Shown in pieces: positions 5,717 to 20,576 of a stretch of 64,000 bases of DNA; the stretch's first letter is position 1; each line of letters starts with the position of its first letter. The position numbers and the translations under genes are program-made. The stretch comes from Oikopleura dioica (taxonomy: Eukaryota; Animalia; Chordata): assembly GCA_907165135.1 (NCBI GenBank), contig OU015566.1, forward strand, positions 7,440,001 through 7,504,000, given 5' to 3'. Under the pieces are notes generated by a model. The model ran no database searches, had not been told where the DNA came from, and was given only the letters and a program-made list of their open reading frames with translations.

Positions 5717-6759
5717 CCTTCCAAAAGTCCTTCTCTCTCGTCAAATCTTGACTACAGAGCAATGAACCTTCAGACAGGATTAAACCTGGCATGTTTATTC
5801 AGGGCGACCAGAATTGAATATATGGAAAGCTATGTTAATTAAGTGATAAATGAGTTCTCCCAGACCAAGTAAACGTTCAAAATTCTATTTAAAATGAAGT
5901 TCGATTTGATAATCTCTTCCTTGATTTCAATAGCAAGTTTGGGTGAAATAATGAAGATTTTTTTTAAGTTTGAAATCGAAGAATTCTAATCTTAGTAATT
6001 TTTGTTTTATTTTTTGATAATTTTTTTGATAAAAAATATTCTTCTGTAAAAATCAAAATCTTTCACCCGATAGTTCAAGTAGAATTGCCGAAAATGCCGA
6101 CCTGCCAGTCGACTGCGCTAGCGGTTGTCATTTCGGACTCCAAAAATGTTCGTCTTTTCAATCTTGATGCAGACAGTCGAGCGTGTACCTTGGCGTTATC
6201 AATCACTCGGCAGCTTCCTGCTGCGTTGCGTCTCTCCGCTGGGCTCAGATGGCGCTCGCGAGTCGTTCTCGACGCAGCGGATCGCCGCGCTCGCCTCAAA
6301 TATTTCCCCTGATAACGATATAAACACATCTAGATATAAAATAAGAAAAACTAAACAAGTCTAAACTTGTTTCGCCTGGCAATAATAAATTCGAAGATTA
6401 CGACGGGAGAGAGAGAGTTACGTTGGCACGTGTCTAGGGCAAGAAAAACGACAGAGAAAGGAGCAAAGATAAAGATAGAGAGAGAGAATCGTAAAACGAC
6501 GACTCGTAATAAAAATAACGAAAAGGCGCAGAATCCCCATCTCAAAATCCCGCGCAAAGAATAAAAAAGACTCAAATCCACGAATCTCCATTCAGAAGAT
6601 CCAAGAAGAATCATCAACGGAAAGAAAAAAACCGTATAGCGAGCTGGTATCAAATTGTTGATAAGAAATAAGGATCCCAGAGGCTGCAAGGGATCAATTA
6701 AGAAACAAGAGAGAGAGACGAGAAAAAACGTAGAGATAGTACAAAGAAGAGAAATCACG

Positions 6760-6789
6760 ATGCCGTCAAATCCTAACGATGTCAAAATG
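6760..6789 (+). CDS. QKI: Candidate first coding micro-exon of QKI isoform A ([10 protein letters not shown])
   Basis: ATG followed by donor ATG|GTATGT, phase 0, compatible with acceptor TTTCAG|TTC at 8446. Confidence 0.5.
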
Positions 6790-9700
6790 GTATGTAAGAA
6801 GCGGACCCCCTTAAAGCCGGTTGTCCTTGCCGGAGATTTTATCTGATCCGCGAAATGATCCGCATAATTTGTGAAAATCGAAGTTCTGAATCAACAAATC
6901 ACGTACCACCCAATTAGCCTGAATGTTTATCAAAGACCTGGCTAGGCAATTCCAGCGCTAGAATGACAATAGCAGACCCCACAAGGGGTAAAATACCTAT
7001 TTAATTAGTAAGAGTCAGTACCCGCGGGGCAGAGTCGCGCAGGAATGTCGACCACGATCCTTCAGATCAGAGTCTCTCAGTCCGAAAACGCCTCAGATAA
7101 AGAAATTTAATTCCTGTCTATATTTTCAAATAATAACATCATTTCCCAAGGCCGTAACTGATACCAGACCGGCCATAAAGGAAATCTTCGACGTCTTAAA
7201 TCGCTTTCATAGCAATTAAAATTAACGTAATTCATTGATTCAAAACTTATGATAAGTTCAAGAATGGCCGGTCTATCAGACCGAACCTTCGGCTAATAAA
7301 TAATTTCATAAAACTCTCCGAAATTTTAACGACCCGTGCTAGAGCAGATTTTTTATGAAAAGGACCTCCGTTGATGACCACGAAAGCGTTTAATTTTCGT
7401 TGCGGGTTGTACTCATCAATTATTTTTTTAAAGTCTATTCGTAAAGTTGCGTTTTCTTGGACCGATTGATGTTTATTGCATTGCCCGGTCATAAATTTTG
7501 AACTCTAGAATTATGACAGGTCTAGCATACGGGCCATTCAGGAACAGCCCCGTGAGAATAAATTGCTTTACGAGTAATTCTCTAATCCAGTGAGCTATTC
7601 AAAATACTTTCCCGCGATTTATGAAGGGATTTTTTAACCCCTCAGCGCATTTCTGCCAGTTCTGCGGGCGCAGGGCATGAACTGTAGATTCCCTTATGCT
7701 TTATGGTTAGGGTTAGGGTTAGGGTTAAAAAGTCCGCTTTGATAACTCTTGGCAATATTTTTCGCAGGTCCGATATTGTTGATGTCACCAGTCGGTTTCA
7801 GCAAATGAGCCTGGATCAGTGCGGACGATTATTTTACATAAGTGCTCACCTTAACAACTGAAACCTGATATGCCAAGGATCAGCCACATTTACGGTCAAA
7901 AATTGACTCGATACTTCAACGCCCTACTTTTTTTGCAAATTAACAAAAAACTCAATTAATTTAATTAACTATCTACCAATTCAAATGAACTCAGAGGGTT
8001 GTTGCGGAGGATCTTGTCCGATGTGACGCGTTTTGTTTGCTCAACCCTTGTTCCACTGTAGCTCTGGGTCGAGGGTTTTGTACTTTTTTGATAAATGAAA
8101 GGCTCGTTTAGCGATAGTACGTGAAAAGACTCGGCCAGGGCCCGGTGTCACTTTCTAACAGCCACCTAAAAATACAATCATCCAACAATTACCGTTAGAA
8201 ATACAACTCTACTAAGAGAAACTGCAAGTCGAATAAGGGAAAGAGAGAGATAATTTTAAAAAGAAGACGAAATTTTAATGGTAAATATAATTTCTGTCGA
8301 ATAGCCATAAAAGGAATTTTTTGTTTTATTTTTTAATTTTATGTTATAAGAAAGTCTAGTAGACAGATTCTAGAGAATGAAAAGGAAGCAGCGAAAAAGA
8401 TATTTTGATAATAAAAAGTTCAATTTTTTGACGACAACGTTTCAGTTCATGAAAGAAGAGCAGTTCATGATGCCGGCAGGATTCGACGAAAACGACAAAA
8501 AGACGCGTGACAAGTGTCTCTATCTGAAGCAGCTCCTGGCAGATAAACGCACGATGGCCCAGATGCCCGGCGCTTTCACTCACCTTGACCGCCTCTTAGA
8601 CGATGGTAAGTACCAAAGAACTTTTTATTGAAAGATTTGATATGAGAAAATGTTTGGACAAAAGAGTAAAAAAGTAAAATTTAAAAATCCCCGTGTCTAA
8701 AAATCAAAACAAGAGGCATCATTTTGAAGTGCTCCCGCGGTGAAGGCAAAGCCAGCCTCCAAGTGCCGCGAAAATATACGAAACAAGGGGCGGATTCAGG
8801 CTCAAGTGCGTGCACCAGCCCGGCTTATCTGAATCCCTTCGTTCTTTTGAACACCTCCGTGGAGGAATTAGATGCGAATAAACACCACAAAAATATTTTC
8901 AACAAAACACTTTCTTTCTTGGAAACTTTTCAAATCTGGTCTTTCTTTTCAAAAAAAGAGTAGAAATCGAGAATTCAAATCTGACAGTAGACTTTACTTA
9001 CAGGCTTTACATAGTGATACCCTTATTTAACTTGACCATAAATGTGCAAAAATAGGGAGATCACTATCATAATTCTTGGAGAAAACGGTCTGTTTTGGCT
9101 CTTAAAATTTCGAAAAAAGAAAAAAAAGAAAAGCTTGGCTCATTAATAAAATAGTAAAAGACAAGGAAATTCTAGCCGCGCGAGCAATGATCGAGCGCCA
9201 CGGGGACGTCAAGATTGATCGTCATGTTTCCTGGGGCGGAGATTCCTTCTAACTTTGAAATTGTAGCTTTCGTCTAATTTTTAGAATCAACTCTTGATAA
9301 TCAAATAATCATAAATTATCATTTGTCATCTTTTTCTTCTTTTTCACCCGTGCTATTTTCTTTCGCAAAACACTTGTCACGTGATTTGAGATTAAAAAAA
9401 GAACACGATAAGACCCGCAAGTTTGACTAAAACAAAAGACTGGTAAGGGTTGAGAAAGTACCCAAAAAGTTCAGCCTGGGTATGAGAGAAACATAAGAGG
9501 TAGGAGCACTTATCATATCACCTCTTGAGTAAAATTATCTGGGACCGGCTTTTTGCCGGAAATAGAGTTATGATTTTTCTTCTCATAAAAATCCTGGGTT
9601 AAGAAGAGACGGGACACAACAGACTTTGCGGACTGTTTTGGTGCTCTATCAAAATTCGGAAGTTTTATGATGATTTTTACAATTGCAATTGCCAAGGGTC

Positions 9701-12700
9701 GATAATTTCCTCGAGTCCGACTCAATCACGTTCGGGCTCGTCAAGCTTAAGGGCCTTGATGTTTAACGAGGCTGATCATTTATAGCGCGCTTCTAAATCA
9801 TTCAAGGTCTAAAAATTTTAAAAGTACGATGAATAATGTTTAGTAAAAATTGCTCCTCAGGAGCCGCTTCATGTTTCTAGCGCTCTTTTTGCAAATCGGA
9901 TTTGATTCACTTGCTGCTGACGATATGCAAGTCAAGCGAAGCCCGGGACAGGGATTTTAAATAGGGCTAGAATGATTAAATTCCAGAAATTATTTTATCA
10001 ATTTTTTTTTGAAAAGTCACCCTTTTTTATCGTTTAAAATCGTTTGAGACAACAAAATTCTATTTTAAAAATCGGGTCTCGTTGTAAAATTGTGTTTCGA
10101 TTGATTGCCAGTTTTTTTCAATCAACTCGGCCCGCTGTAATTTCCCCCGAGGCGCGTGTTCTTCCCTGGCGGCCGCTCGTTCTCTACGTAAAATGGGGCT
10201 TGATTTGTCAACTCTGGCGGCGCTAATGAACTCGGTATCTCTTGCCAGAAAGCGCGTACCGCAAGGAAACCAAAAGGCACGCAATCTCAGCCCACAACCT
10301 TTGGCTTATCGACTTTATTGGGAAATTATTACGCCTCAAACTATTGATACACTTACCGACTTTTTTTACCGGTGGAATTTCGCATCAAATTTTTATGACG
10401 CTGGAAAGAATTTGTACCGCATCAAAGATCTTAACCCTGGGCTCGGCAACCTGTGTAGAAAACCTGAGTAAGGTTCTGAAGAGCTAAAATGAAAAGCCGC
10501 ATAGCGGCTTTTTTATAAAGGAAGCCGCGAAGCGGCTTCCCAATTCATTCACTATAATTATTTTTAAAATACTCGCGAAGCCGCTTTGCGGCTTCGTTAT
10601 TGAGAAAGCCGCTACGCGGCTTTTCATTTTAGCTTTTCAAAACCTTACTCAGGTTTTCTACACAGGTTGCCGAGCCCAGTCTTAGCCCTTCCAGGCACTT
10701 TTACCAATTTAGGGGTAGCGAGAAAGAAACTGTTTATAACCGACTTTTTGTGTTGAATAATAACCGCATCGTGCAAATGCCAGGAAGCTGGGATCGGAAG
10801 GCTGTTTATCGAAAGAATGCTTATCATTTTTTCGAATCTTGAATTCCGAATTTGAAAAAATGTAGAATTCGAACGAGACCGGTTTGTTTGATATTGAAAT
10901 AGAAAAAAAACGCAGTTGGTGTTTTTAGTTTGGAACAGGTGTTTTAATCTTTCATCCACTACTTGAATCGCTCAATGACCAGCTCACTTTTGGTACAAAT
11001 GGACCCTCGAGCACACGCACAGACGGCAAAATATAACTTCGAATAACTAACTCCGTCTTGCTGTTAATTTTTTAATTTCTGAAAGAGTCTCAATTTTAAA
11101 TTTTGCCAACAAGTTCATTTCTTAGCAATCAATTTTAACCCATTACGGCTCTTGGACCATCTTTCTGGTTCAAGAATTGAAATGAAAATGCAAAATGGTT
11201 GACTTTTCTTTCTTCAAAAATCTTTTCAGAAAAGCCGCATGCGGCTTTTTATTTAAAAAAATCAAAGAAACAACCTTGATAGTAAATTTTAACCCATTAC
11301 CTCGTTTGGACCATCATCTTGGCTCAAGAATCAAAAATAGTGAAAATTTCAATTCGCCAAAAACTCTTTTTCAAAAGCCGCATGCGGCTTTCTTTTCTGA
11401 GAAAAGAAATGACCCTAGTTGTAATCAGTTGAAGAAAAAGATAAACTAAAATAACCATACTAAAACTCTCCGTCGAACTTCAATTCTTCTGGCCGTACTT
11501 TTATGCACATAATTCTTCGATTGCCATCGGCGCATATGTATCAGCCTTTTTCTTTTGGTTTATCAGCGGTGGTGTCCCGCGGAGCGCCCTCTTCCGAGGC
11601 GCCTTGGCTTTGAGTTTCTGGGCAAGAGCGGCTTGAGCGCGCTGCTGAGCCGCGCTTGGGTCCATTCACTTTGTGACTCCCTCTGTGTTCTTCTCGCCTC
11701 TGTAACGCGCCAAGAAGAAAAAAAAAAAACGCGAAAAGTGAATTTCCTTTTTTGAAAAAAAATAACAACAAGACAAGAACAAAAGAAAGAAGAGCGCCGA
11801 AATTATAGAGCTCGCAATAAAAGATCAAAGAAACGAACAAAACAAAGAGATTTTGCAAAAAAAGAGAGATAAGAAAAACGCAGAAAAGAAACAGAAAATA
11901 ACATGCAGGGGCCTCTGCATACGATCGGGGCAGCTACAGTAGCGGCACCGTTCAAGGAAAAGGGCCATAGTATCTGACTCCTCAATTTCAGTAATTGAAA
12001 TTAACGCTTGAGTAGTTTTTTCATTACTCAGTAGTGGCGATAAATCACTGATTTCCCTACCACTTGATGCTTTAATTAATATTTAATGGAAGCACTTTTT
12101 ATTGAATTCTTGAGATGCTGGATTTTAGGTTCAGAAAACTCAAGAATTTGACTTTTGTTTTCGACCTTTTTTCGCCATTTTTTGTTCTTAAAATTTTGGA
12201 TATTTTTGTTGTTCCCATCCAAAAATAGGTTCAAAAAGAGCTTTCCGCTCTTGACCACCCAGTACCATGAGTAAGGAGTAACCGGAAACGACCTCTCAAC
12301 ACATGTAGCCAAGGTTGAGGAGCATCGTTGCGAGTCGGGTTACGCGAGCTGACACTTATCCAATTTTATAAACTCGTTCTCACGATAAATACGCCGCATT
12401 ATGACTGATTAAAAACTTGTTAACACTCGACTTTCGCGCTGCTCAGTGCTCGCATCCGGCGGCGAATGTTTCCGACTTAAAAATGCACCATAAACATTAT
12501 TACTCTTAATTACAAGCATTTTCATTGGAAGCCTAAACTTGAGGTACCAAAGTAGCCCTTCCCAAAGCCCGCCGAAAAGCCACTAGAAAGAAACGGAACC
12601 CAAATGAATTCGTCGACGAGATCTTCCAGTCCCCTCGATAGACCTGCGGCAAACGCTAGTCCGCAGGACAAAGATCGAGCTACCTATCTTCAACAACTAA

Positions 12701-15700
12701 TCAAAGACCAGAAAACTTGCCTTAATTACCCTAATGTCTTTCATCACGTGGAAAGATTATTGGCCGATGGTGAGTTTCAAAGTTATTCTCATGTTTTTCG
12801 TTATCGTTTTTACAGATGAAGATGATAGCTCATCAAAGGTGGACATAAATTAGCTAGACTCTATTGTTGGTATAAACTTTCGAGTATCCCCATAAAGAAA
12901 AATTCAAATTTTTCATACGATTTATATTCTTATGGTTTCCATTAATCTTCTTTTGACCCGTGAACGGCCTCTGCTTGCAATTATTTAGAGTTTATCTTTT
13001 GGCCCTTTTCAACTTTCAACGCCCTTTGTCAACTTGAGAGCAAGAACTGATGGGTAGCAACTGGGAAATATCTGCAAAGTGAAGGGTGCTGTTATTTATG
13101 AGAGTTCAATGATGAGAGTTTTTTTCGGGAGTTTAAAAGTTTTTTAAAGTTGATCTCCCGCGGCGGATATCATTGCCGGCACACGCTGGGGCGGACATTT
13201 AGTTCGTATAGACGCCCCTCTGCGCGGCTTTAATCACATCGTGTCCATGAACATCGAGCCAGGCCACAATTCACACCACTTAGCCACGGCTCACTGAGTG
13301 CTAAAACTGACCAAGGCACTCTTCTCCCTGACGTGATAATTGAGCGCTAGAAGAATTCCGAAAAGGAATTTCGAACTGTCCAAAACAGACAAGGCACAAT
13401 TTAAAAACAGGAAACTTGATTTTGGGGGTAATCTTTTATGAACTTTCCAGATTTCCTCACCCATTTAGTCCAGTATAATTGAAAAATAAGGGTGGAAAAG
13501 ATCATCCTTGTCTGGCCGTTTTTATCGCGCCGCTTTTCGCTACTGCCTAACCGAGTTTGCAGATTATAAGCAGCTCAACAAAATGAACTGCTGGGGGTGA
13601 TTTGTGTGTTCAGCCAGGGCAAGCTCGACAAGCTTGTTAAGGTCATCAAAGTGGTAAGTCGCGTGGCTTCCGCCGAGAAAGAGTTAGACAACTGACACCT
13701 TTTATCCCCAAAAAGGATATTTCCCTGTCATAATAAACCGGCCCCCGTGCTAACTCTTGTTACTGCCTATATCCCCCTTTCTTTTCAAAATACAGCAGTG
13801 TATCATTTTCCAAAAGAGCGCTAGAATGATTCGAAAATACGGAAAAATCGTATGCGAAAAAGTTCACCATACTCTTTTTTCAACAATAATAGTAATTTTT
13901 ATCTGAGAAGCGGACGAGTTGAAGGGTAATCTTAGTTGTTTGTTGTTGGCGTTGTCAATTATCCGCTTCAAGAAATGTATACTTTAATAAGCGTAAAAAC
14001 AAAAACGGCTCCGGTGGAGCTACTCGAGTAGCGAAAACAACGTGCCCGCTCGGCCTGATCCGATGCCCATTGTATTTAGTCACCAGAAAGTATATAGTTT
14101 CACACAGCCTTTTTCTACGAACCGCTATTCACCGCCGCCAAGATCATAACTTTTCAAGAAGAAAAAAAAAGCTGCTCATGGGAAAAGAATCCTTCTTGAT
14201 TCATTTCTACAGCCGAGAGCCATTATAAGACCACCCCTAAAATCTAAAAATATTTTCCCGAATTTCGGAAAAAGCGACCTTGAGTTTGACAGTTGTTGTG
14301 TTTTTGACGCGTGCTCAATTCGAGTGTATGTGAGAAACATTCCGGTACGCTTGTTAAGGTTTTTCTATTTGAAATTTGCAAGAAGATTAGCTTCAAACAT
14401 TCTCAAAGACCGCACAGCTGCGGCTTACGTCAGTTTGTTGCATATGAGACATTTTTTCGCAGTATAAAGCGGCAACTTATTAACAAAGATCTTATAAGAA
14501 AAACCTTAAGGGTATCGAGTTTAATCAATCTTGAAGGAGAAAATGAAGCCCTTGGACTAGACAGGGCCCAGATCAAGTCTCAAGTGGGCAGATAAATCCA
14601 CCTCCGAAGGAAGGGCTCTAAATTGCCGCTAATTGGGGGCCGATTTGTGGCCCATTTTCTACTCGAAATTCAAGAAACTTTAAGTTCATCACAGTTTTAT
14701 GATATCCCCAGAAATGATCGTTTTTTACTTTCAGAAACATAAAAACACTGAGGAAGGCCCACTTGCTCCTCCAGCCAGTGCGCGGAGGAAAAGGTCGAGC
14801 AGTTATTAGCGTCAGCCCGGTGAATTATTTTTGAATTATTCATCACACACTGACTTTACATTTTGGCACCTTGGCCGAACATTTGATTTTTCAAAACAAA
14901 AATAGAATTTTCAAAAAATAAAAAAAAATTCAAAAATACCAACTATCAAAAAGTTCAATAAAAAGATTCTTCGAAGAATTCAAAAAATTGAATAAAACCT
15001 CATTTTCGGCTTCAGAAATCGTCAAAGTCCGAAGCGTGCTATTCCAAAACAACACAAAACCTCTCGAACTGCCGACTCCAACTGGGAAGACTGTAACTCT
15101 TTCGAAAAAAGTCTTTGTTCCGGCAAAAGATTATCCAGACGTGAGTCAAAGCTACAATCGCAGAAGTGTCTGAGTGACTATTTTAGTACAACTTTGTGGG
15201 GCGAATACTTGGGCCAAGAGGACTAACCGCCAAACAACTCGAGCAAGAGACGGGTTGTAAGATCATGGTGCGCGGAAAGGGCTCGATGAGGGACAAGAAA
15301 AAGGTGAAATTTCTTCACTGTGCATTTTTTCAAATTCTTCATTTTAGGAGGAGCAAAACAAGGGCAGGCCAAACTGGGAACATTTGAATGAAGAACTCCA
15401 TGTTTTAATCACCGTTGAAGATTCCGAAAACAGAGCTGAAGTCAAATTACAAAGAGCGACGCAAGAAATTGAAAAGCTCCTAGTTCCACAGGTAAAAATG
15501 CTTATTCCAACAAGAGGTACAATCTCTTCCTTTAGTCCGAAGGCGAAGATGACCTGAAAAAGAAACAGCTCATGGAACTGGCGATCATCAACGGAACGTA
15601 TCGAGACAATTCGAATGGAAAAATGGCCGCAGCAAACGGGTTAAATCGGTTAACGATGCCCGGTCTTCTTCAGGCACGGATCAGAACCATAGTTGAACTT

Positions 15701-17599
15701 GTCGCTTCTAAAAGCTTTTTGATGATCCTGTAAAAGTCGACGAACCCAGCATTCCGTCTTCCAAATCTCATGACGCCCATGGCTTGCGCTCCTGGCCTTA
15801 TGAATACCTCAATCCTTCGCCCAGTAAGTCCAAGTTAATTCTGTTTGAGCTCAAAATAAGGCGACGAAGATCAAATTCTAAAAAGAGATTTCAAGTAGAA
15901 TCGCTAAAAAATCGTTCCAAATCAATCCATTAGCGTTGATCGACCAATTAGTTGGAAAAAATCGAAATTGCCAACGAATTGGTAAAACAACGCAAATGGG
16001 TTAATTTGTTAATTTTCTTGAACTTTCCAAATTGATTAAATTTAATCAAATCAGCCAAAAGCGCTTATAAATCACGCCATCGAATTCTTTACAACCGCAA
16101 ATCAATGTTAAATAATCAGAGAGTTAAAAATTTTCGTTCAGCCCATTTCGATCAATAGCAGCATGCAAAACATCGAGCAGCCGACATTATATTATGCACC
16201 TATGGTTACGGGCTGGTCAATCTGCGGCGGCAGCTTTTCCTAATTCAATTAGAAACTTAGAAACAAAGTTAAGCCTAGTCCGTTGTTCATCCTTTTCTTC
16301 GCTGGTAATAAGAATTGGCACATGCAAGGTGTCAACGGAACATTTTTAGGAGCCAGCAGCTGATTCACACGTACTGGCGACAACTGTAATTCAATCCTTT
16401 CTTACAGTTGTTTAAAGCTAAATTTACTCTTAAAATCGAGAAGCCGCTTGCGGCTTCGAGCTTAAAAATCTAAAAGCCGCGCTTTCTCGAAGCCGCAAGC
16501 ATCTCTTTTGTGAATCCATGACCAGCCCTAGAAAAGACGCCAGCCAGTATTCGTACGCGACATTAAACGGCCTAAATGGTCTAATGGGCGCAAATGGCTT
16601 GGACTACGCCTCCCAGAACGTCTCGCCGAACGAAATGATGGGTGAGTCGCCTGGAGGAATGCCACTACCCGCCTCAAGCTCGAACGGGCATGGGCACCTA
16701 CACAGTCAGTCAGGCACGGCGCTGGGCACCATGGGCGACCTGGTGCACAGCCGCGGGCACAGCCACCACGTGGTAGCCAACGGCAACTGAAATCAACAAT
16801 GAGTTCATCCCCCAAAAAACAAAAACACATGGACAAGATGCCATTTTAAATATTTTTGTATTTTTCAATTACTATTATGCATAAAAAACGAAAACTACGG
16901 AGCCGGTTGCTTATTTGTTATTATTTTCTGCCAAAGTCTGAATTGCTCAATTTTTTTTCAGTACGAGTTGGTCCGCTTTTCATTCATAAAAAAATATTTT
17001 TTTGTTTCGAGAATTTTATCTCACACATTCCTCCTCCTGTACTTTATAATTTAAAATTATTATTTCGCGATTTTTAAATGTGCAATTTCAAAAACCCCGA
17101 AACTGGGCGTCAATAAAAAGCCGACTTGAGAACCCTATCCGACGCAAATGAAGAGCTTTTTATTGCCGCCCGGTTATTTTTTAAATTACAGTAAGACTGA
17201 TCTTGCACAAGTGAATATTTCTCGGCCTTGAAGGGGCTGAAAGTGAAACTATCTCATCATGAATCATGACACCACTCTATCTTCAGTCCTTAAAAATCCC
17301 ATGACAATGAATTTAAGGCGAATCCCCTTAAATTAGGGCTCTCCCCACTAGAACAATGAATCCCAGACTCGTCATTTTGGGCTAATAGTGCCATAAGCTT
17401 TATTTTGAAAATATCAATGCTCTCCTCAAATTTCAACCTTGACGCTTTTTAAGGATCAACTGGTGTGTCGCAAGGATCCTCGTCAGCTGGGCCGAGCGGT
17501 TCGGGCGGGCCGGGCCCCATCAAGGGCGCCCGGACTAGCCGGCCGACTCTCCAGCCCGGGCAGCATCCGTACGCGAGACCGAAAGGTACAGTAAGCTAA
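6760..17599 (+). CDS. QKI: Quaking / STAR-family KH RNA-binding protein, multi-isoform locus
   Basis: Core exons 15016-15140, 15187-15303, 15348-15491 and 15536-15673 give [73 protein letters not shown] (KH) and [22 protein letters not shown] (QUA2), nearly identical to vertebrate QKI. Confidence 0.97.
7705..7727 (+). repeat. Interstitial telomere-type repeat (TTAGGG)3
   Basis: GGTTAGGGTTAGGGTTAGGGTTA inside a QKI intron. Confidence 0.85.
8446..8605 (+). CDS. QKI: QKI QUA1 dimerisation exon A
   Basis: [28 protein letters not shown] with phase-1 donor G|GTAAGT. Matches QKI [32 protein letters not shown]. Confidence 0.9.
10437..10679. mobile_element. Non-autonomous MITE (hAT-like), 243 bp, ~65-bp TIRs, 8-bp TSD
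   Basis: Left end CTGGGCTCGGCAACCTGTGTAGAAAACCTGAGTAAGG is inverted at the right end. Flanks are TCTTAACC (10429-10436) and TCTTAGCC (10680-10687). Interior has AAGCCGC-N-GCGGCTT hairpins. Confidence 0.88.
12604..12769 (+). CDS. QKI: QKI QUA1 dimerisation exon B (alternative first coding exon)
   Basis: [55 protein letters not shown] with phase-1 donor G|GTGAGT, the same phase as exon A. Confidence 0.9.
16518..16790 (+). CDS. QKI: QKI Tyr-rich exon with internal donor (16641/16642) and read-through C-terminus
   Basis: [25 protein letters not shown]|GTGAGT, reading through to ..HHVVANGN*. The exact acceptor is uncertain. Confidence 0.7.
   Translation: MTSPRKDASQYSYATLNGLNGLMGANGLDYASQNVSPNEMMGESPGGMPLPASSSNGHGHLHSQSGTALGTMGDLVHSRGHSHHVVANGN
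17101..17175. repeat. Imperfect ~21-bp inverted repeat (hairpin) containing AATAAA
   Basis: AACTGGGCGTCAATAAAAAGC (17101-17121) pairs with GCTTTTTATTGCCGCCCGGTT (17155-17175), 2 mismatches. Confidence 0.7.
17454..17599 (+). CDS. QKI: QKI alternative C-terminal exon with HPYxR NLS-like motif
   Basis: Acceptor TTTTAAG|GA in phase 1 gives [44 protein letters not shown]. Confidence 0.8.
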
Positions 17600-20576
17600 T
17601 TTTGAATTAAGACCCCCGCTAGATCATTTTTTACCGAAACCCCTTAAACCGAACCACATTTGATCCTATCGCTCTTCAACCATTTCCATTTTCCTCACGT
17701 GACCTGAGAGATCACGTGGTGAAATTATCCTGTGTGCCTTTTGAACACTCTGTGCCTTTTCATCCGACCTCTTTTCCTTTTCATCCCTTTTTTAATCTTA
17801 AAAAACGATGAAAATAAAAGTTGGTCAAAATTTTAATTTTGCAAATACTCCATTTTCTTATTTCAACTTTCCTTTCTTATTTTCATGAGACCATGACTCT
17901 TTTCAACCCTTTTCTGTGAAGCAACGAAGCTAATCTAAGCTATGTATGATAAACTTGTTATTTTCCAATTTGTGACAAAGACTCTTTCTCAATTTTGCAA
18001 AGATCGTTATTTCAAAACAACCAAAAAAAGAACAAGAACAAAAAAAAACTCTATCAAAGTGCCAACTTCTCGACCTGCAGGTGGCCCGAACCTATCCTTT
18101 CGAAGAGGGTTGGGGTAGGGTTAAAAACGGTACCAAACCTACCTACACACCAATTTTCTGTCACCAGGCTTTTCACTATTTTTATAGATTCAGAAAAGTT
18201 AATAAATTCGGTTCAAACAAAATAAAACAAAAACTTTGGAAAATCCAAAATATGGCAAAATGTACAGGCTGCTGGACAAAATACAGGGCAGTGAATACAA
18301 CATTTTTATCAACATCTTGGTGTTGATTTACGATCATTCGCGTAAATCAAAACAAATCTAACCCAGTTGGTGTTTAGCGTAATTTTTAGTTGGTGCTCAA
18401 CCCATGCCCGCTTACTGGCCAAAATATTGGTCACTTCGCGCGCAGGGGTTGAACTTTTTAATCAATGATCTGAAACTTGGCTCTCTCTCTCCTTAAAATC
18501 TTGACCCTTTTTTTGGAATTTCGATTTGTCAATTGTACAACCGCTATGCTTTAACATCGTCATGAAAAGATTTCTTTTCGATATTGCTGTTATTTGCATG
18601 AAAAAAAAAACAAATTGATTCATTTTACTCATATTCTTACTTTTTCCACACTTATTTCCACGATTCTCATCAATTTTGCTACTGGCTTTGAATTAAGGGT
18701 ACATCACCATCTAACAGACAACGGAGCAGGAACAAACTTTCGGATGTTCCATGCTCCGTAAGTTGGTAGTGGTGCACGCTTAACAACTTCCAGTAACATC
18801 AACATTCGTTCGTCTGATAGGATCACTACTCACCCTCAATGTTCTAACCCCGATTCCACCAGTTCAACGCGTGTTCAACAAGTTGATACGCGTTTTCCCC
18901 ACTGACAAACACCCCCTTAGGAGCAACACTAGAATATAATTAAAAATATGAGACCAAGTTTTTCATAATTTCGTTTACTAATGTTTATATTCTCAGGTGG
19001 CCATAACCACTAACTCCGGTGATTCATCTCCTCACAACTTACAAATCACACAAAGGGTGGATGCAGATAAATAACAAAAATAGTTACAAGTAGTGAGATT
19101 ATTACAGTAACGAAAATTGTAGTCCAAAATCGAATAGAAATTACATTTGAGCACGCAAATTTAATTAACGCTGATTGTATTGATGCCGCTCAATCGCTCC
19201 AGATTTCATTAGAAACGCTTCGGCCATTCCCTTGAGATAGAAAAAAGGGATGACCTCTCTTTTCCTCGCTTTTCTTCAAGACTTTTGTCCTGAAAAATGA
19301 TCAACATAGAGTTGAATAATAATTAACTAAAACCCTTTTTGGTGTTCATAACTCGGTGTTTTCTTTACTAAGCTGGGTGCATCACAGTAGTAAAAACAAG
19401 TTCTACTGCCTGGTCATATAAGAAGGGTACCTGGGATGACTCATCTCAGAGCCAAGTCTTCTAATTTGACCAGGGAGAAACTCGTGATTACCGACCTGGT
19501 CATTTGACGAGTTCAAAATCTTGAATCAGAGTCCGTAAGTGATCAATTTTGGCAGCCAAATTGAAACCTACCTCTCTGCGGGCTAATCTGACACTATCTA
19601 GACGGGCTCTAGCAAAAAAGAGAGACCCTTATCAGCTTAGCCACTATTCCGATTCAGTGGAAAGCCTACTAAAGTAGTTATGGGCTCGTTTGTAATTAAA
19701 ATTTCTTTCAAACAGAAGAAGATGATCGTAGTCCTTGAGATTATTATTGCGCCTCCTAATTTGATCCAGATGCTTTGTGGCGTCACGTGATCGCGCATTA
19801 GCTAAGTGGGATTTTCTTCTCACTTACTACTCGTTCTCTTCATAAGAAAAACCGAACGAATCATCCGTCAAAATAGAGCGCGGAATGTCTAATTTAGTAA
19901 AAGTAAGAAATTTAAAGTGGCGAAAAACGAAGTTTTCATAAATATCAAAAAATGACTTGATAGCAAGGAAGAGTATAAAAATCTGCATCCCCGGCCAGTG
20001 CCTGAGATTCTAACCGTTTTGGAGCTGACCTGCGCTGAGCTGTCGCCACTAATCTAACAACTCCAACACGCACACTACTACTCTGCTTGCAACAACAAAA
20101 AACAAACATCAACAAAAATCTAACGTCCGCCGCCAAAACACACAAAAGTCTTCAAGAAAAAAACAACACATTGTGCTTGAATTTGTCTACTTTAGATAGC
20201 CTGACTCTGATAACTAATTCCGCGGTGCCTCTTTTCTTCAGATATCTACTGTATATATCAGTACGTAAATGTGGACAGGAATGGAGGCCCGACTACCTAA
20301 CCCATGCACCTGTACAAAGAAACCTGTATTTAGCTGTATCTTTGGACACAGCAGCCAGCAGTCTTGCCTTTTAACCTATTTCCATTGATTTCATTTCACG
20401 TATTTATTCCTACTTGATGCAGTAAGCAGGATTTTTTACTATTATTATATTAAATAATAAACAAAAGAATATAAGAGAGAATCAATTAGACAAATATGAT
20501 TTTATTGGAGAATTGCAAAAATACGTTAGAGCATACAAAAATATAAAGATACAGTCAGAGCAAACAGAAGCGCTTT

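What the first reader, a model, noticed from the sequence alone, without database searches (positions are those of the whole stretch)
6760..15140. Quaking with two interchangeable QUA1 dimerisation domains from alternative first exons
Seen: exon A (8446-8605, [28 protein letters not shown]) and exon B (12604-12769, [28 protein letters not shown]) share only 13 of 28 core residues. Both end in a phase-1 G|GT donor that joins acceptor 15016 to rebuild the conserved Glu of LL(D/A)D-E-I. Each has its own upstream promoter-like region. Established: QUA1 drives STAR homodimerisation, and vertebrate QKI has one QUA1 and varies mainly at the C-terminus. Inference: one locus makes proteins with the same RNA-binding unit but different dimer interfaces, allowing separate A/A and B/B pools or A/B heterodimers. 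With the alternative tails this would be a combinatorial STAR code. I know of no prior description.
Basis: partly seen in the sequence, partly recalled or inferred. Interest (0 to 1): 0.8.

Follow-up and report, generated by a model that had tools for sequence, protein, structure and literature searches.

The report
Tunicate Quaking gene swaps dimerisation exons
The single Quaking-type RNA-binding gene of the tunicate Oikopleura dioica has two alternative 5' exon sets, each coding a different version of most of the protein's dimerisation domain and both feeding into the same RNA-binding exons; sea squirts have the same layout and both isoforms are already in public gene models, but I found no paper on it and its function is untested.

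Summary
Exon A (8446-8605) and exon B (12604-12769 as given; 12568-12769 as annotated) both score as STAR_dimer/QUA1. Both end in a phase-1 GT donor. The window holds only one KH core, entered at acceptor 15016.

RNA reads from a diverged O. dioica lineage join 8605 to exon 3 in 117 reads. They also show that exon A is not a first exon: a small coding exon (6760-6789) is spliced onto it. Exon B likewise follows its own first exon (ATG 11903-11956, conserved GA donor), but has only about 1-3% of A's read depth.

The window matches GenBank gene OKI2018_I69.chr1.g1976 exactly. Its transcripts t1 (A-type) and t2 (B-type) are these two isoforms, so the isoforms are already annotated. I did not see the B-to-exon-3 junction in O. 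dioica reads. It rests on t2, on Bergen model CBY30806, on 15 synonymous versus 0 non-synonymous changes in B's core, and on B-type mRNAs of other larvaceans.

Both types with the same core occur in Ciona, Phallusia and Clavelina. In Clavelina the genome order is A, B, shared core, and a tree separates A from B. This is an old, tunicate-wide duplication of the 5' module. Whether A and B differ in dimer partner choice is untested. No paper on it was found.

The parts
6760..6789 (+). Exon 1A, coding part ([10 protein letters not shown]). Phase-0 donor gtatgt at 6790. The 5' UTR lies upstream; its start is not mapped.
   Evidence: Sequence. The 24 nt before the junction in RNA loose ends at 8452 are identical to 6766-6789 (33, 52 and 21 reads). 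Residues 1-10 of GenBank t1, P0152.
8446..8605 (+). Exon 2A: A-type QUA1, helix 1, loop and the first part of helix 2. Phase-1 donor G|gtaagt.
   Evidence: Pfam STAR_dimer 39.9 bits. RNA depth about 27-75 over the exon. Loose end behind 8605 is a synonymous variant of exon 3 in 117 reads. 8 synonymous and 0 non-synonymous changes against Bergen.
11903..11956 (+). Exon 1B, coding part ([18 protein letters not shown]). Non-canonical GA donor at 11957. RNA coverage suggests the 5' UTR reaches back to about 11.5-11.7 kb.
   Evidence: RNA reads join 11956 to exon 2B (1 read in X4, 5 in X5). Reads cover 11500-12099 while the intron on either side is empty. Changes at 11944 and 11950 are synonymous. 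The GA donor is conserved in Bergen.
12568..12769 (+). Exon 2B: B-type QUA1. Acceptor aaag|CCC at 12567/12568. Phase-1 donor G|gtgagt.
   Evidence: Pfam STAR_dimer 47.3 bits. Residues 19-85 of GenBank t2, P0151. QUA1 core has 15 synonymous and 0 non-synonymous codon changes against Bergen. Low RNA depth, about 0.2-1.7.
15016..15140 (+). Shared exon 3: end of QUA1 helix 2 ([11 protein letters not shown]) and the linker. It is the common phase-1 acceptor for 2A and 2B.
   Evidence: The loose-end consensus behind 8605 translates to [10 protein letters not shown] with 4 synonymous differences.
15187..15823 (+). Shared exons 4-7 coding KH and QUA2: 15187-15303, 15348-15491, 15536-15673 (GC donor), 15737-15823.
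   Evidence: Exact mapping of P0152 and P0151. Pfam KH-I_KHDC4-BBP 69.9 bits. It is the only KH/QUA2 motif set in the window.
16142..16243 (+). Exon 8 with the short tail (..[17 protein letters not shown], stop at 16241-16243). The long-tail form leaves this exon at about 16204.
   Evidence: P0163 diverges after ..YYAPM.
16536..17596 (+). Alternative long-tail coding blocks, about 16536-16641 and about 17441-17596. They end in ..[19 protein letters not shown]. Exact splice boundaries are not resolved.
   Evidence: ORFs. tblastn of the metatranscriptome protein P0163.

Best explanation
This is the single Quaking/HOW-type STAR gene of O. dioica (GenBank OKI2018_I69.chr1.g1976). It carries a tandem duplicate of its 5' module.

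Module A is exon 1A (to 6789) plus exon 2A (8446-8605). Module B is exon 1B (11903-11956) plus exon 2B (12568-12769). Each module supplies a start codon, a short N-terminus and about 35 residues of QUA1: helix 1, the loop and the first part of helix 2. Either module's phase-1 donor joins the one acceptor at 15016, which supplies the rest of helix 2 and then KH, QUA2 and the tails.

Shown: A-type mRNA is made and is the dominant form in three bulk RNA runs. B-type 1B-2B spliced RNA exists at about 1-3% of A's depth. Both exons are under strong purifying selection. Both isoforms are annotated. The same A-then-B-then-core layout exists in the sea squirt Clavelina. A-types and B-types each group together across larvaceans and ascidians.

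Inferred: module choice is made by two promoters, one upstream of 6760 and one at about 11.5-11.9 kb, probably with different tissue or stage use. A-type transcripts skip 2B; a 2A-to-2B join would in any case be out of frame, because a phase-1 donor would meet a phase-0 acceptor. The duplication dates to the tunicate stem. The long-kept type-specific residues point to different properties of the two QUA1 versions, in partner choice or dimer stability. That last step is untested.
For: - Anatomy and reading frames.
- QUA1 identity of both exons.
- One KH core only.
- RNA: 29, 64 and 24 reads carry AAATTGTCAAAGTACGCAGCGTGCTCTTCC behind 8605, which is exon 3 with 4 synonymous differences. 33, 52 and 21 reads carry exon 1A before 8452. 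There are 6 reads at the 11956-to-2B joint. Intron bins between the exons are empty.
- Public models: t1 = P0152 and t2 = P0151 map exactly to the window; Bergen CBY30806.1 = P0002 is B-type. The Okinawa annotation was RNA-seq-hinted AUGUSTUS with only 18,794 isoforms for 17,260 genes (PMC8008620). Two transcripts for one gene therefore imply hint support (my inference).
- Selection, Okinawa against Bergen: 2A 8 synonymous to 0 non-synonymous; 2B core 15 to 0; exon 3 16 to 0; GA donor of 1B conserved.
- Other species: spliced mRNAs with A (L002, L005) and B (L001, L004). L004 (B) and L005 (A) share 95.8% identical downstream mRNA while their 5' ends do not align.
- Ciona, Phallusia and Clavelina each have an A-type and a B-type protein with the same 140-residue core. 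These plus two larvacean groups are the only 5 of 91 core groups with more than one QUA1.
- Clavelina genome: A exon at 6770-7177, B exon at 10001-10384, shared exon at 11839.
- Tree: A and B lie on either side of one branch, support 93/89, in 99% of bootstrap trees.
Against: - The B-to-15016 junction was not observed directly in O. dioica reads. No loose end at 12769 was listed, though 8 loose ends were not shown.
- A word search for protein fragments bridging that junction found only genomic ORF fragments.
- B depth is very low in the three runs, which come from a different lineage than the window.
- No transcription start sites were mapped. A second promoter is inferred only from reads covering the 1B 5' UTR.
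- The tree rests on 38 columns and lacks vertebrate sequences.
- Nothing here tests dimerisation. The hydrophobic positions, the Tyr and the junction Glu are the same in A and B.
Confidence: 0.88

Rival explanations
1. Same gene structure, but the two QUA1 versions are functionally equivalent. The duplicated 5' modules would exist only to give two differently regulated promoters. A and B would homodimerise and heterodimerise freely.
For: The core hydrophobic positions (Y, L, L, L/I, F, H, L/V, R, L, L) and the Tyr and junction Glu are the same in both types. C. elegans asd-2 uses alternative first exons for tissue-specific expression (PMC3469465). A and B differ about 30-100-fold in read depth in bulk RNA, which fits differential regulation.
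Against: Type-specific residues have been kept since larvaceans and ascidians split. These include KCLYLKQLL with G before F in A, and YLQQL..K.C..YP in B. A-to-A identity is 18-19 of 31 and B-to-B is 19-21, against 11-14 for A-to-B. The tree gives 93/89 support. No non-synonymous change is seen in either core between O. dioica lineages. Constraint that differs by type is not expected if the two versions were interchangeable.
Confidence: 0.35
2. B-type mRNAs do not come from their own promoter. They would arise from the long A-promoter pre-mRNA by spliced-leader trans-splicing onto an acceptor upstream of exon 1B.
For: From my own knowledge, not tested here: O. dioica and Ciona trans-splice many mRNAs. 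No start site was mapped, and B is rare relative to A.
Against: Reads covering 1B carry at least about 170 nt of upstream sequence homologous to the window's 11.7-11.9 kb region rather than a leader (loose end before 11930). In Clavelina both A and B are long ATG-bearing first coding exons 3 kb apart. That layout is typical of alternative promoters.
Confidence: 0.12
3. Exon A belongs to a separate small gene or is a pseudogene fragment. The Bergen annotation calls it as a 70-residue gene and the Clavelina annotation as a 154-residue gene.
For: Separate small STAR_dimer 'genes' are called at L008 6684-6953 and L003 6307-7207.
Against: 117 RNA reads join 8605 to exon 3, with 0.96-0.99 agreement. 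Full-length A-type mRNAs exist: P0163, P0009, P0164. There are 8 synonymous and 0 non-synonymous changes. GenBank t1 is A-type.
Confidence: 0.02
4. Exon B is a conserved relic that is transcribed but no longer joined to the KH exons in O. dioica.
For: The direct 12769-to-15016 junction was not seen here, and read depth is very low.
Against: The QUA1 core shows 15 synonymous and 0 non-synonymous codon changes across lineages. The phase-1 donor and the odd GA donor of 1B are both conserved. Spliced 1B-2B reads exist. Hint-based model t2 and Bergen CBY30806 include the junction. B-to-exon-3 mRNAs exist in at least two other larvaceans.
Confidence: 0.03

Closest known systems
Vertebrate QKI (QKI-5, -6, -7)
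   Same: Same STAR layout of QUA1, KH and QUA2. A's QUA1 aligns best to Quaking-A 2YMJ at 24.5 bits. Both have alternative C-terminal tails, and the long tail here ends in an HPYARP motif. My recollection that QKI-5 carries a nuclear signal RVHPYQR is from memory and was not tested.
   Different: As described in the reviews found (PMC9786888), vertebrate isoforms share one QUA1 and differ at the C-terminus. Here the N-terminal three quarters of QUA1 is also swapped through alternative 5' modules.
C. elegans asd-2 (a QKI-type STAR gene with alternative first exons)
   Same: A STAR gene whose alternative first exons give isoforms with tissue-specific use. The asd-2b first exon is used in body-wall and pharyngeal muscle (PMC3469465).
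   Different: I could not check whether the asd-2 alternative exons include QUA1. The original paper, PMC2216695, is not held. Here each module demonstrably codes QUA1, and the pair is conserved across a subphylum.
Sam68, SLM-1 and T-STAR paralogues
   Same: STAR proteins with related but different QUA1 regions. T-STAR and Sam68 can heterodimerise (PMC4735526). This shows that diverged QUA1 versions can still pair.
   Different: Those are separate genes with separate KH domains. Here a single gene and a single KH core carry two QUA1 versions.
Ascidian Quaking isoforms in RefSeq and UniProt (Ciona 'quaking-A X4' and 'quaking-B X2', Clavelina, Phallusia)
   Same: These are orthologous A-type and B-type N-termini on the same 140-residue core. 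In Clavelina the genome order is A, B, shared exon.
   Different: In ascidians each type is one long first coding exon of 128-136 residues. In O. dioica each module is split into two short exons, and module B has a GA-AG intron.

Membership tests
STAR/GSG family, Quaking/HOW/GLD-1 subfamily | QUA1 homodimerisation region (Pfam PF16544 STAR_dimer) N-terminal to KH | tested here: met
   Exon peptides: A 39.9 bits, B 47.3 bits, cut-off 26.3. Full isoforms: 64.7 and 71.0 bits.
STAR/GSG family, Quaking/HOW/GLD-1 subfamily | Single maxi-KH domain | tested here: met
   PF22675 69.9 bits and PF00013 26.4 bits in P0152 and P0151. One copy in the window.
STAR/GSG family, Quaking/HOW/GLD-1 subfamily | QUA2 helix after KH (..[13 protein letters not shown]..) | tested here: met
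   Motif at 15587 on the + strand. It is present in P0151 and P0152. No separate Pfam model was scanned.
STAR/GSG family, Quaking/HOW/GLD-1 subfamily | Conserved Tyr at the start of helix 1 and Glu of LLDE-E-I. The role of these residues in QKI dimerisation is recalled from memory. | tested here: met
   Both A and B keep YL..L and rebuild the Glu across the splice junction. That the residues are present is shown by sequence; their role here was not tested.
STAR/GSG family, Quaking/HOW/GLD-1 subfamily | Actual homodimerisation and binding of the ACUAAY-type element | not testable with these tools
Gene with alternative 5' modules (alternative promoters or first exons) | Two upstream exon sets joined mutually exclusively to one common acceptor | tested here: met
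   A to 15016 is seen in 117 reads. B to 15016 is in GenBank t2 and CBY30806 and in orthologous mRNAs. It was not seen directly in O. dioica reads.
Gene with alternative 5' modules (alternative promoters or first exons) | Separate transcription start for each module | tested here: inconclusive
   Reads cover the 1B 5' UTR (11500-12099) while the flanking intron is empty. No cap or start-site data were available.

The most novel reading that the evidence does not exclude
The A and B QUA1 versions are orthogonal: A pairs with A and B pairs with B, with little cross-pairing. Tunicates would then have kept two insulated dimer pools of one RNA-binding core from a single gene since their common ancestor, each combinable with nuclear or cytoplasmic tails. 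That would be a dimerisation code written by choice of 5' exon.
Probability: 0.25. Interest if true: 0.75.

Novelty: new variant of a known kind. Interest (0 to 1): 0.55.

Why it matters
STAR proteins bind bipartite RNA sites as dimers. In vertebrates, isoforms that share one QUA1 can pair with each other (from memory, not tested here). A gene that swaps most of QUA1 while keeping the RNA-binding core could control who pairs with whom without gene duplication. It could also simply tie a different dimer stability to a different promoter.

The arrangement is present in both larvaceans and ascidians, and both versions are under strict purifying selection. This argues that it does something. Tunicates, with Ciona electroporation and Oikopleura knock-down, offer a tractable test. 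Od-quaking and Ci-quaking are expressed in notochord and muscle (PMC3034685).

It also corrects annotations. The Bergen and Clavelina gene sets call the A module as a separate small gene, and one Bergen model chains both QUA1 copies together.

Tried and rejected
- **Read stretch.** The single read-laying run was limited to 6,000 letters. The 8605-to-15016 junction spans 6,411, so I laid 8300-14299 and read the junctions from loose-end consensus. This worked for A. For B no loose end at 12769 was listed.
- **Read source.** The runs offered belong to a lineage 5-10% diverged from the window. Indels in exon 1B and the 5' part of 2B produced apparent odd joints (11707 to 11930; 11956 to 12607, 'between: not known'). 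I read these as alignment gaps over diverged sequence, not as splice sites. The annotated acceptor is at 12568.
- **Junction fragments.** A word search with a piece of database protein P0151 (residues 19-127), looking for O. dioica fragments that bridge B to exon 3, found only genomic ORF fragments.
- **Locus look-ups.** Ciona P0242 and Clavelina P0185 loci were not on record. Clavelina P0167 worked.
- **Tara scaffold.** A Tara scaffold of another larvacean (L006) has the B exon and the core but no A exon within 10 kb upstream. This is uninformative because introns there are longer.
- **DNA repeats.** No DNA-level repeat links modules A and B, so the duplication is old.
- **RNA genes.** No Rfam family or tRNA lies in 6000-19000. 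Folding the conserved or covered intronic blocks gave z-scores near 0.
- **Literature.** Searches on Oikopleura + quaking; QUA1 + alternative first exon; Ciona + quaking + isoform; and Qua1 + heterodimer + STAR found no description of alternative QUA1 exons. The first asd-2 paper is not held.
- **Pseudo-heterodimer fold.** I considered folding the Bergen mis-model P0160, which chains A and B, as a stand-in heterodimer. I dropped it because its A helix 2 is truncated by a spurious exon.
- **Joined models.** The full-length queries were database proteins. The only joining was a short in-script translation check.

Full report
**What is in the sequence**

- Each codes a YL.QL..D...P..F.H..RLL.D stretch and ends in a phase-1 G|GT donor.
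- The acceptor at 15016 completes a Glu codon with either donor and continues [11 protein letters not shown].. into the KH exons.
- The two cores share 13 of 28 residues.
- Both peptides pass Pfam's curated threshold for STAR_dimer/QUA1: 39.9 and 47.3 bits against 26.3. Both align to the solved QUA1 chains of QKI and GLD-1.
- A six-frame motif scan finds a single KH/QUA2 core in the 64 kb and no third QUA1-like exon.
- No DNA repeat links the two exon regions.

**RNA evidence**

The only RNA runs offered carry the same species label, but their reads are 90-95% like the window, so they come from a diverged lineage.

I could lay at most 6,000 letters once, and the 8605-to-15016 junction spans 6,411. 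I therefore laid 8300-14299 and used the loose ends.

Exon A is well covered.
- Behind 8605, 29, 64 and 24 reads in three runs continue with AAATTGTCAAAGTACGCAGCGTGCTCTTCC. This differs from window 15016-15045 at 4 synonymous sites and translates to [10 protein letters not shown]. So A is spliced to exon 3.
- Before 8452, 33, 52 and 21 reads continue with ..TCAAATCCTAACGATGTCAAAATG followed by TTTACA. The first 24 nt are identical to window 6766-6789.
- Exon A is therefore preceded by a small coding exon 1A (ATG 6760, [10 protein letters not shown], donor gtatgt). It is not a first exon.

Exon B has only about 1-3% of A's depth.
- Six reads join 11956 to exon 2B.
- Their upstream loose end (..ATGCAAGGACCGTTAATGGGA) is the homologue of window 11903-11929 with an in-frame 6-nt indel.
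- This reveals exon 1B (ATG 11903-11956).
- Reads cover 11500-12099, while the neighbouring intron bins are empty.

**Public models**

A profile of the two exon peptides searched against 1.84 billion representative proteins, followed by a cluster look-up, returned three O. dioica GenBank proteins.

| Accession | Model | Type | N-terminal reading |
|---|---|---|---|
| CAG5105267.1 | OKI2018_I69.chr1.g1976.t1, 300 aa | A | [10 protein letters not shown] / FMKEEQ..DRLLDD / EIVK.. |
| CAG5105268.1 | g1976.t2, 322 aa | B | [18 protein letters not shown] / [24 protein letters not shown] / EIVK.. |
| CBY30806.1 | Bergen | B | B-type |

Both Okinawa proteins map to the window without a mismatch. This gives the full exon table, including exon 2B starting at 12568, a GA donor after exon 1B and a GC donor after exon 6.

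The window is therefore Okinawa chromosome 1, and both isoforms are already annotated. That annotation used AUGUSTUS with RNA-seq intron and exon hints. It gave only 18,794 isoforms for 17,260 genes (PMC8008620). Two transcripts for one gene therefore imply hint support for both; this is my inference.

A search for protein fragments bridging B to exon 3 in O. dioica found only genomic ORFs. The direct B junction in this species thus rests on the gene models, not on reads I saw.

**Selection**

I compared the window with the Bergen locus L008.

| Region | Codons | Synonymous | Non-synonymous |
|---|---|---|---|
| Exon 2A | 51 | 8 | 0 |
| Exon 2B QUA1 core | 37 | 15 | 0 |
| Exon 3 | 41 | 16 | 0 |

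The GA donor of exon 1B and both phase-1 donors are conserved. Neither exon is a relic. The Bergen annotation calls the A module as a separate 70-residue gene, and another Bergen model (P0160) chains A and B in one protein. The reads show that both are artefacts.

**Beyond O. dioica**

- Intron-free, full-length A-type mRNAs (L002, L005) and B-type mRNAs (L001, L004) come from marine metatranscriptomes and one Logan run. They carry the larvacean-like core and their species is not identified.
- L004 (B) and L005 (A) share 95.8% identical downstream sequence, including 3' UTR, while their 5' ends do not align.
- I grouped full-length hits by identical 140-residue core. Only 5 of 91 groups carry more than one QUA1, and all five are tunicates: O. 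dioica, another larvacean group, Ciona, Phallusia and Clavelina.
- In the Clavelina genome the A exon (6770-7177), the B exon (10001-10384) and the shared exon (11839) lie in that order.
- A-to-A and B-to-B identities across larvaceans and ascidians (18-21 of 31) exceed A-to-B identities (11-14).
- A maximum-likelihood tree of 38 columns puts A and B on either side of one branch (93/89; 99% of bootstrap trees). Amphioxus, barnacle and oyster fall outside.

I read this as a duplication of the 5' module on the tunicate stem. The caveats are the short alignment and the absence of vertebrate sequences.

**How it most likely works**

Two 5' modules, most likely with their own promoters, each supply a start codon, an N-terminus and 35 of the 48 matched QUA1 positions. 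The remaining 13 positions and the whole RNA-binding unit are shared.

A 2A-to-2B join would be out of frame, and the reads show 2A going to exon 3 with 0.96-0.99 agreement.

What the difference does is unknown. Hydrophobic core positions, the Tyr and the junction Glu are common to both, so heterodimers are not excluded. Several type-specific residues have nevertheless been kept across the subphylum.

**Literature**

Od-quaking is known as a notochord and muscle gene (PMC3034685). C. elegans asd-2 has alternative first exons with tissue-specific use (PMC3469465). T-STAR and Sam68 heterodimerise (PMC4735526). I found no paper describing alternative QUA1 exons.

**Verdict**

The structural interpretation is essentially right, but the QUA1 exons are not first exons. 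The dimer-code idea remains untested.

Noticed in passing
window 8446-8605 compared with 12658-12768 and 15018-15140: Between the Okinawa and Bergen lineages, exon 2A has far fewer synonymous changes (8 of 51 codons) than the exon 2B core (15 of 37) or exon 3 (16 of 41). This hints at an extra constraint on the exon 2A RNA or DNA.
   Followed up: partly
window 8013-8177, 9664-9795, 10084-10349, 10762-11003, 13168-13343, 13932-14112, 14280-14456, 14591-14871: These are single-copy non-coding blocks inside the Quaking introns that stay 70-89% identical to Bergen, while the rest of the introns does not align. The last three lie in reversed order in Bergen. They are candidate enhancers or promoter elements.
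   Followed up: partly
window 13208-13292 and 13953-14077, - strand: These are short stretches covered by high-depth contigs of run X7 (871x and 235x) and by a few RNA reads. They have no Rfam match and no fold signal. They may be small RNAs or parts of an antisense transcript, and remain unexplained.
   Followed up: partly
window 11957 and 15674: Two non-canonical donors sit in this gene. One is a GA-AG intron after exon 1B, conserved in Bergen and supported by spliced reads. The other is a GC donor after exon 6.
   Followed up: partly
window 16204-17596: There are alternative C-terminal tails. The short tail ends at 16240. A long tail is coded at about 16536-16641 and about 17441-17596, ends in an HPYARP motif, and is used in metatranscriptome protein P0163. 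The 16204-to-16536 boundary is not canonical in the window, so the exact splice sites are unresolved.
   Followed up: partly
L008 6684-6953; L003 6307-7207; protein P0160: There are annotation artefacts. The A module is called as a separate small STAR_dimer gene in Bergen O. dioica and in Clavelina. One Bergen model chains the A and B QUA1 copies in tandem.
   Followed up: yes
window 10432-10684: A 108-nt inverted repeat, 90% complementary with a 37-nt spacer, lies inside the A-to-B intron. It looks like a foldback or MITE-type insertion.
   Followed up: no
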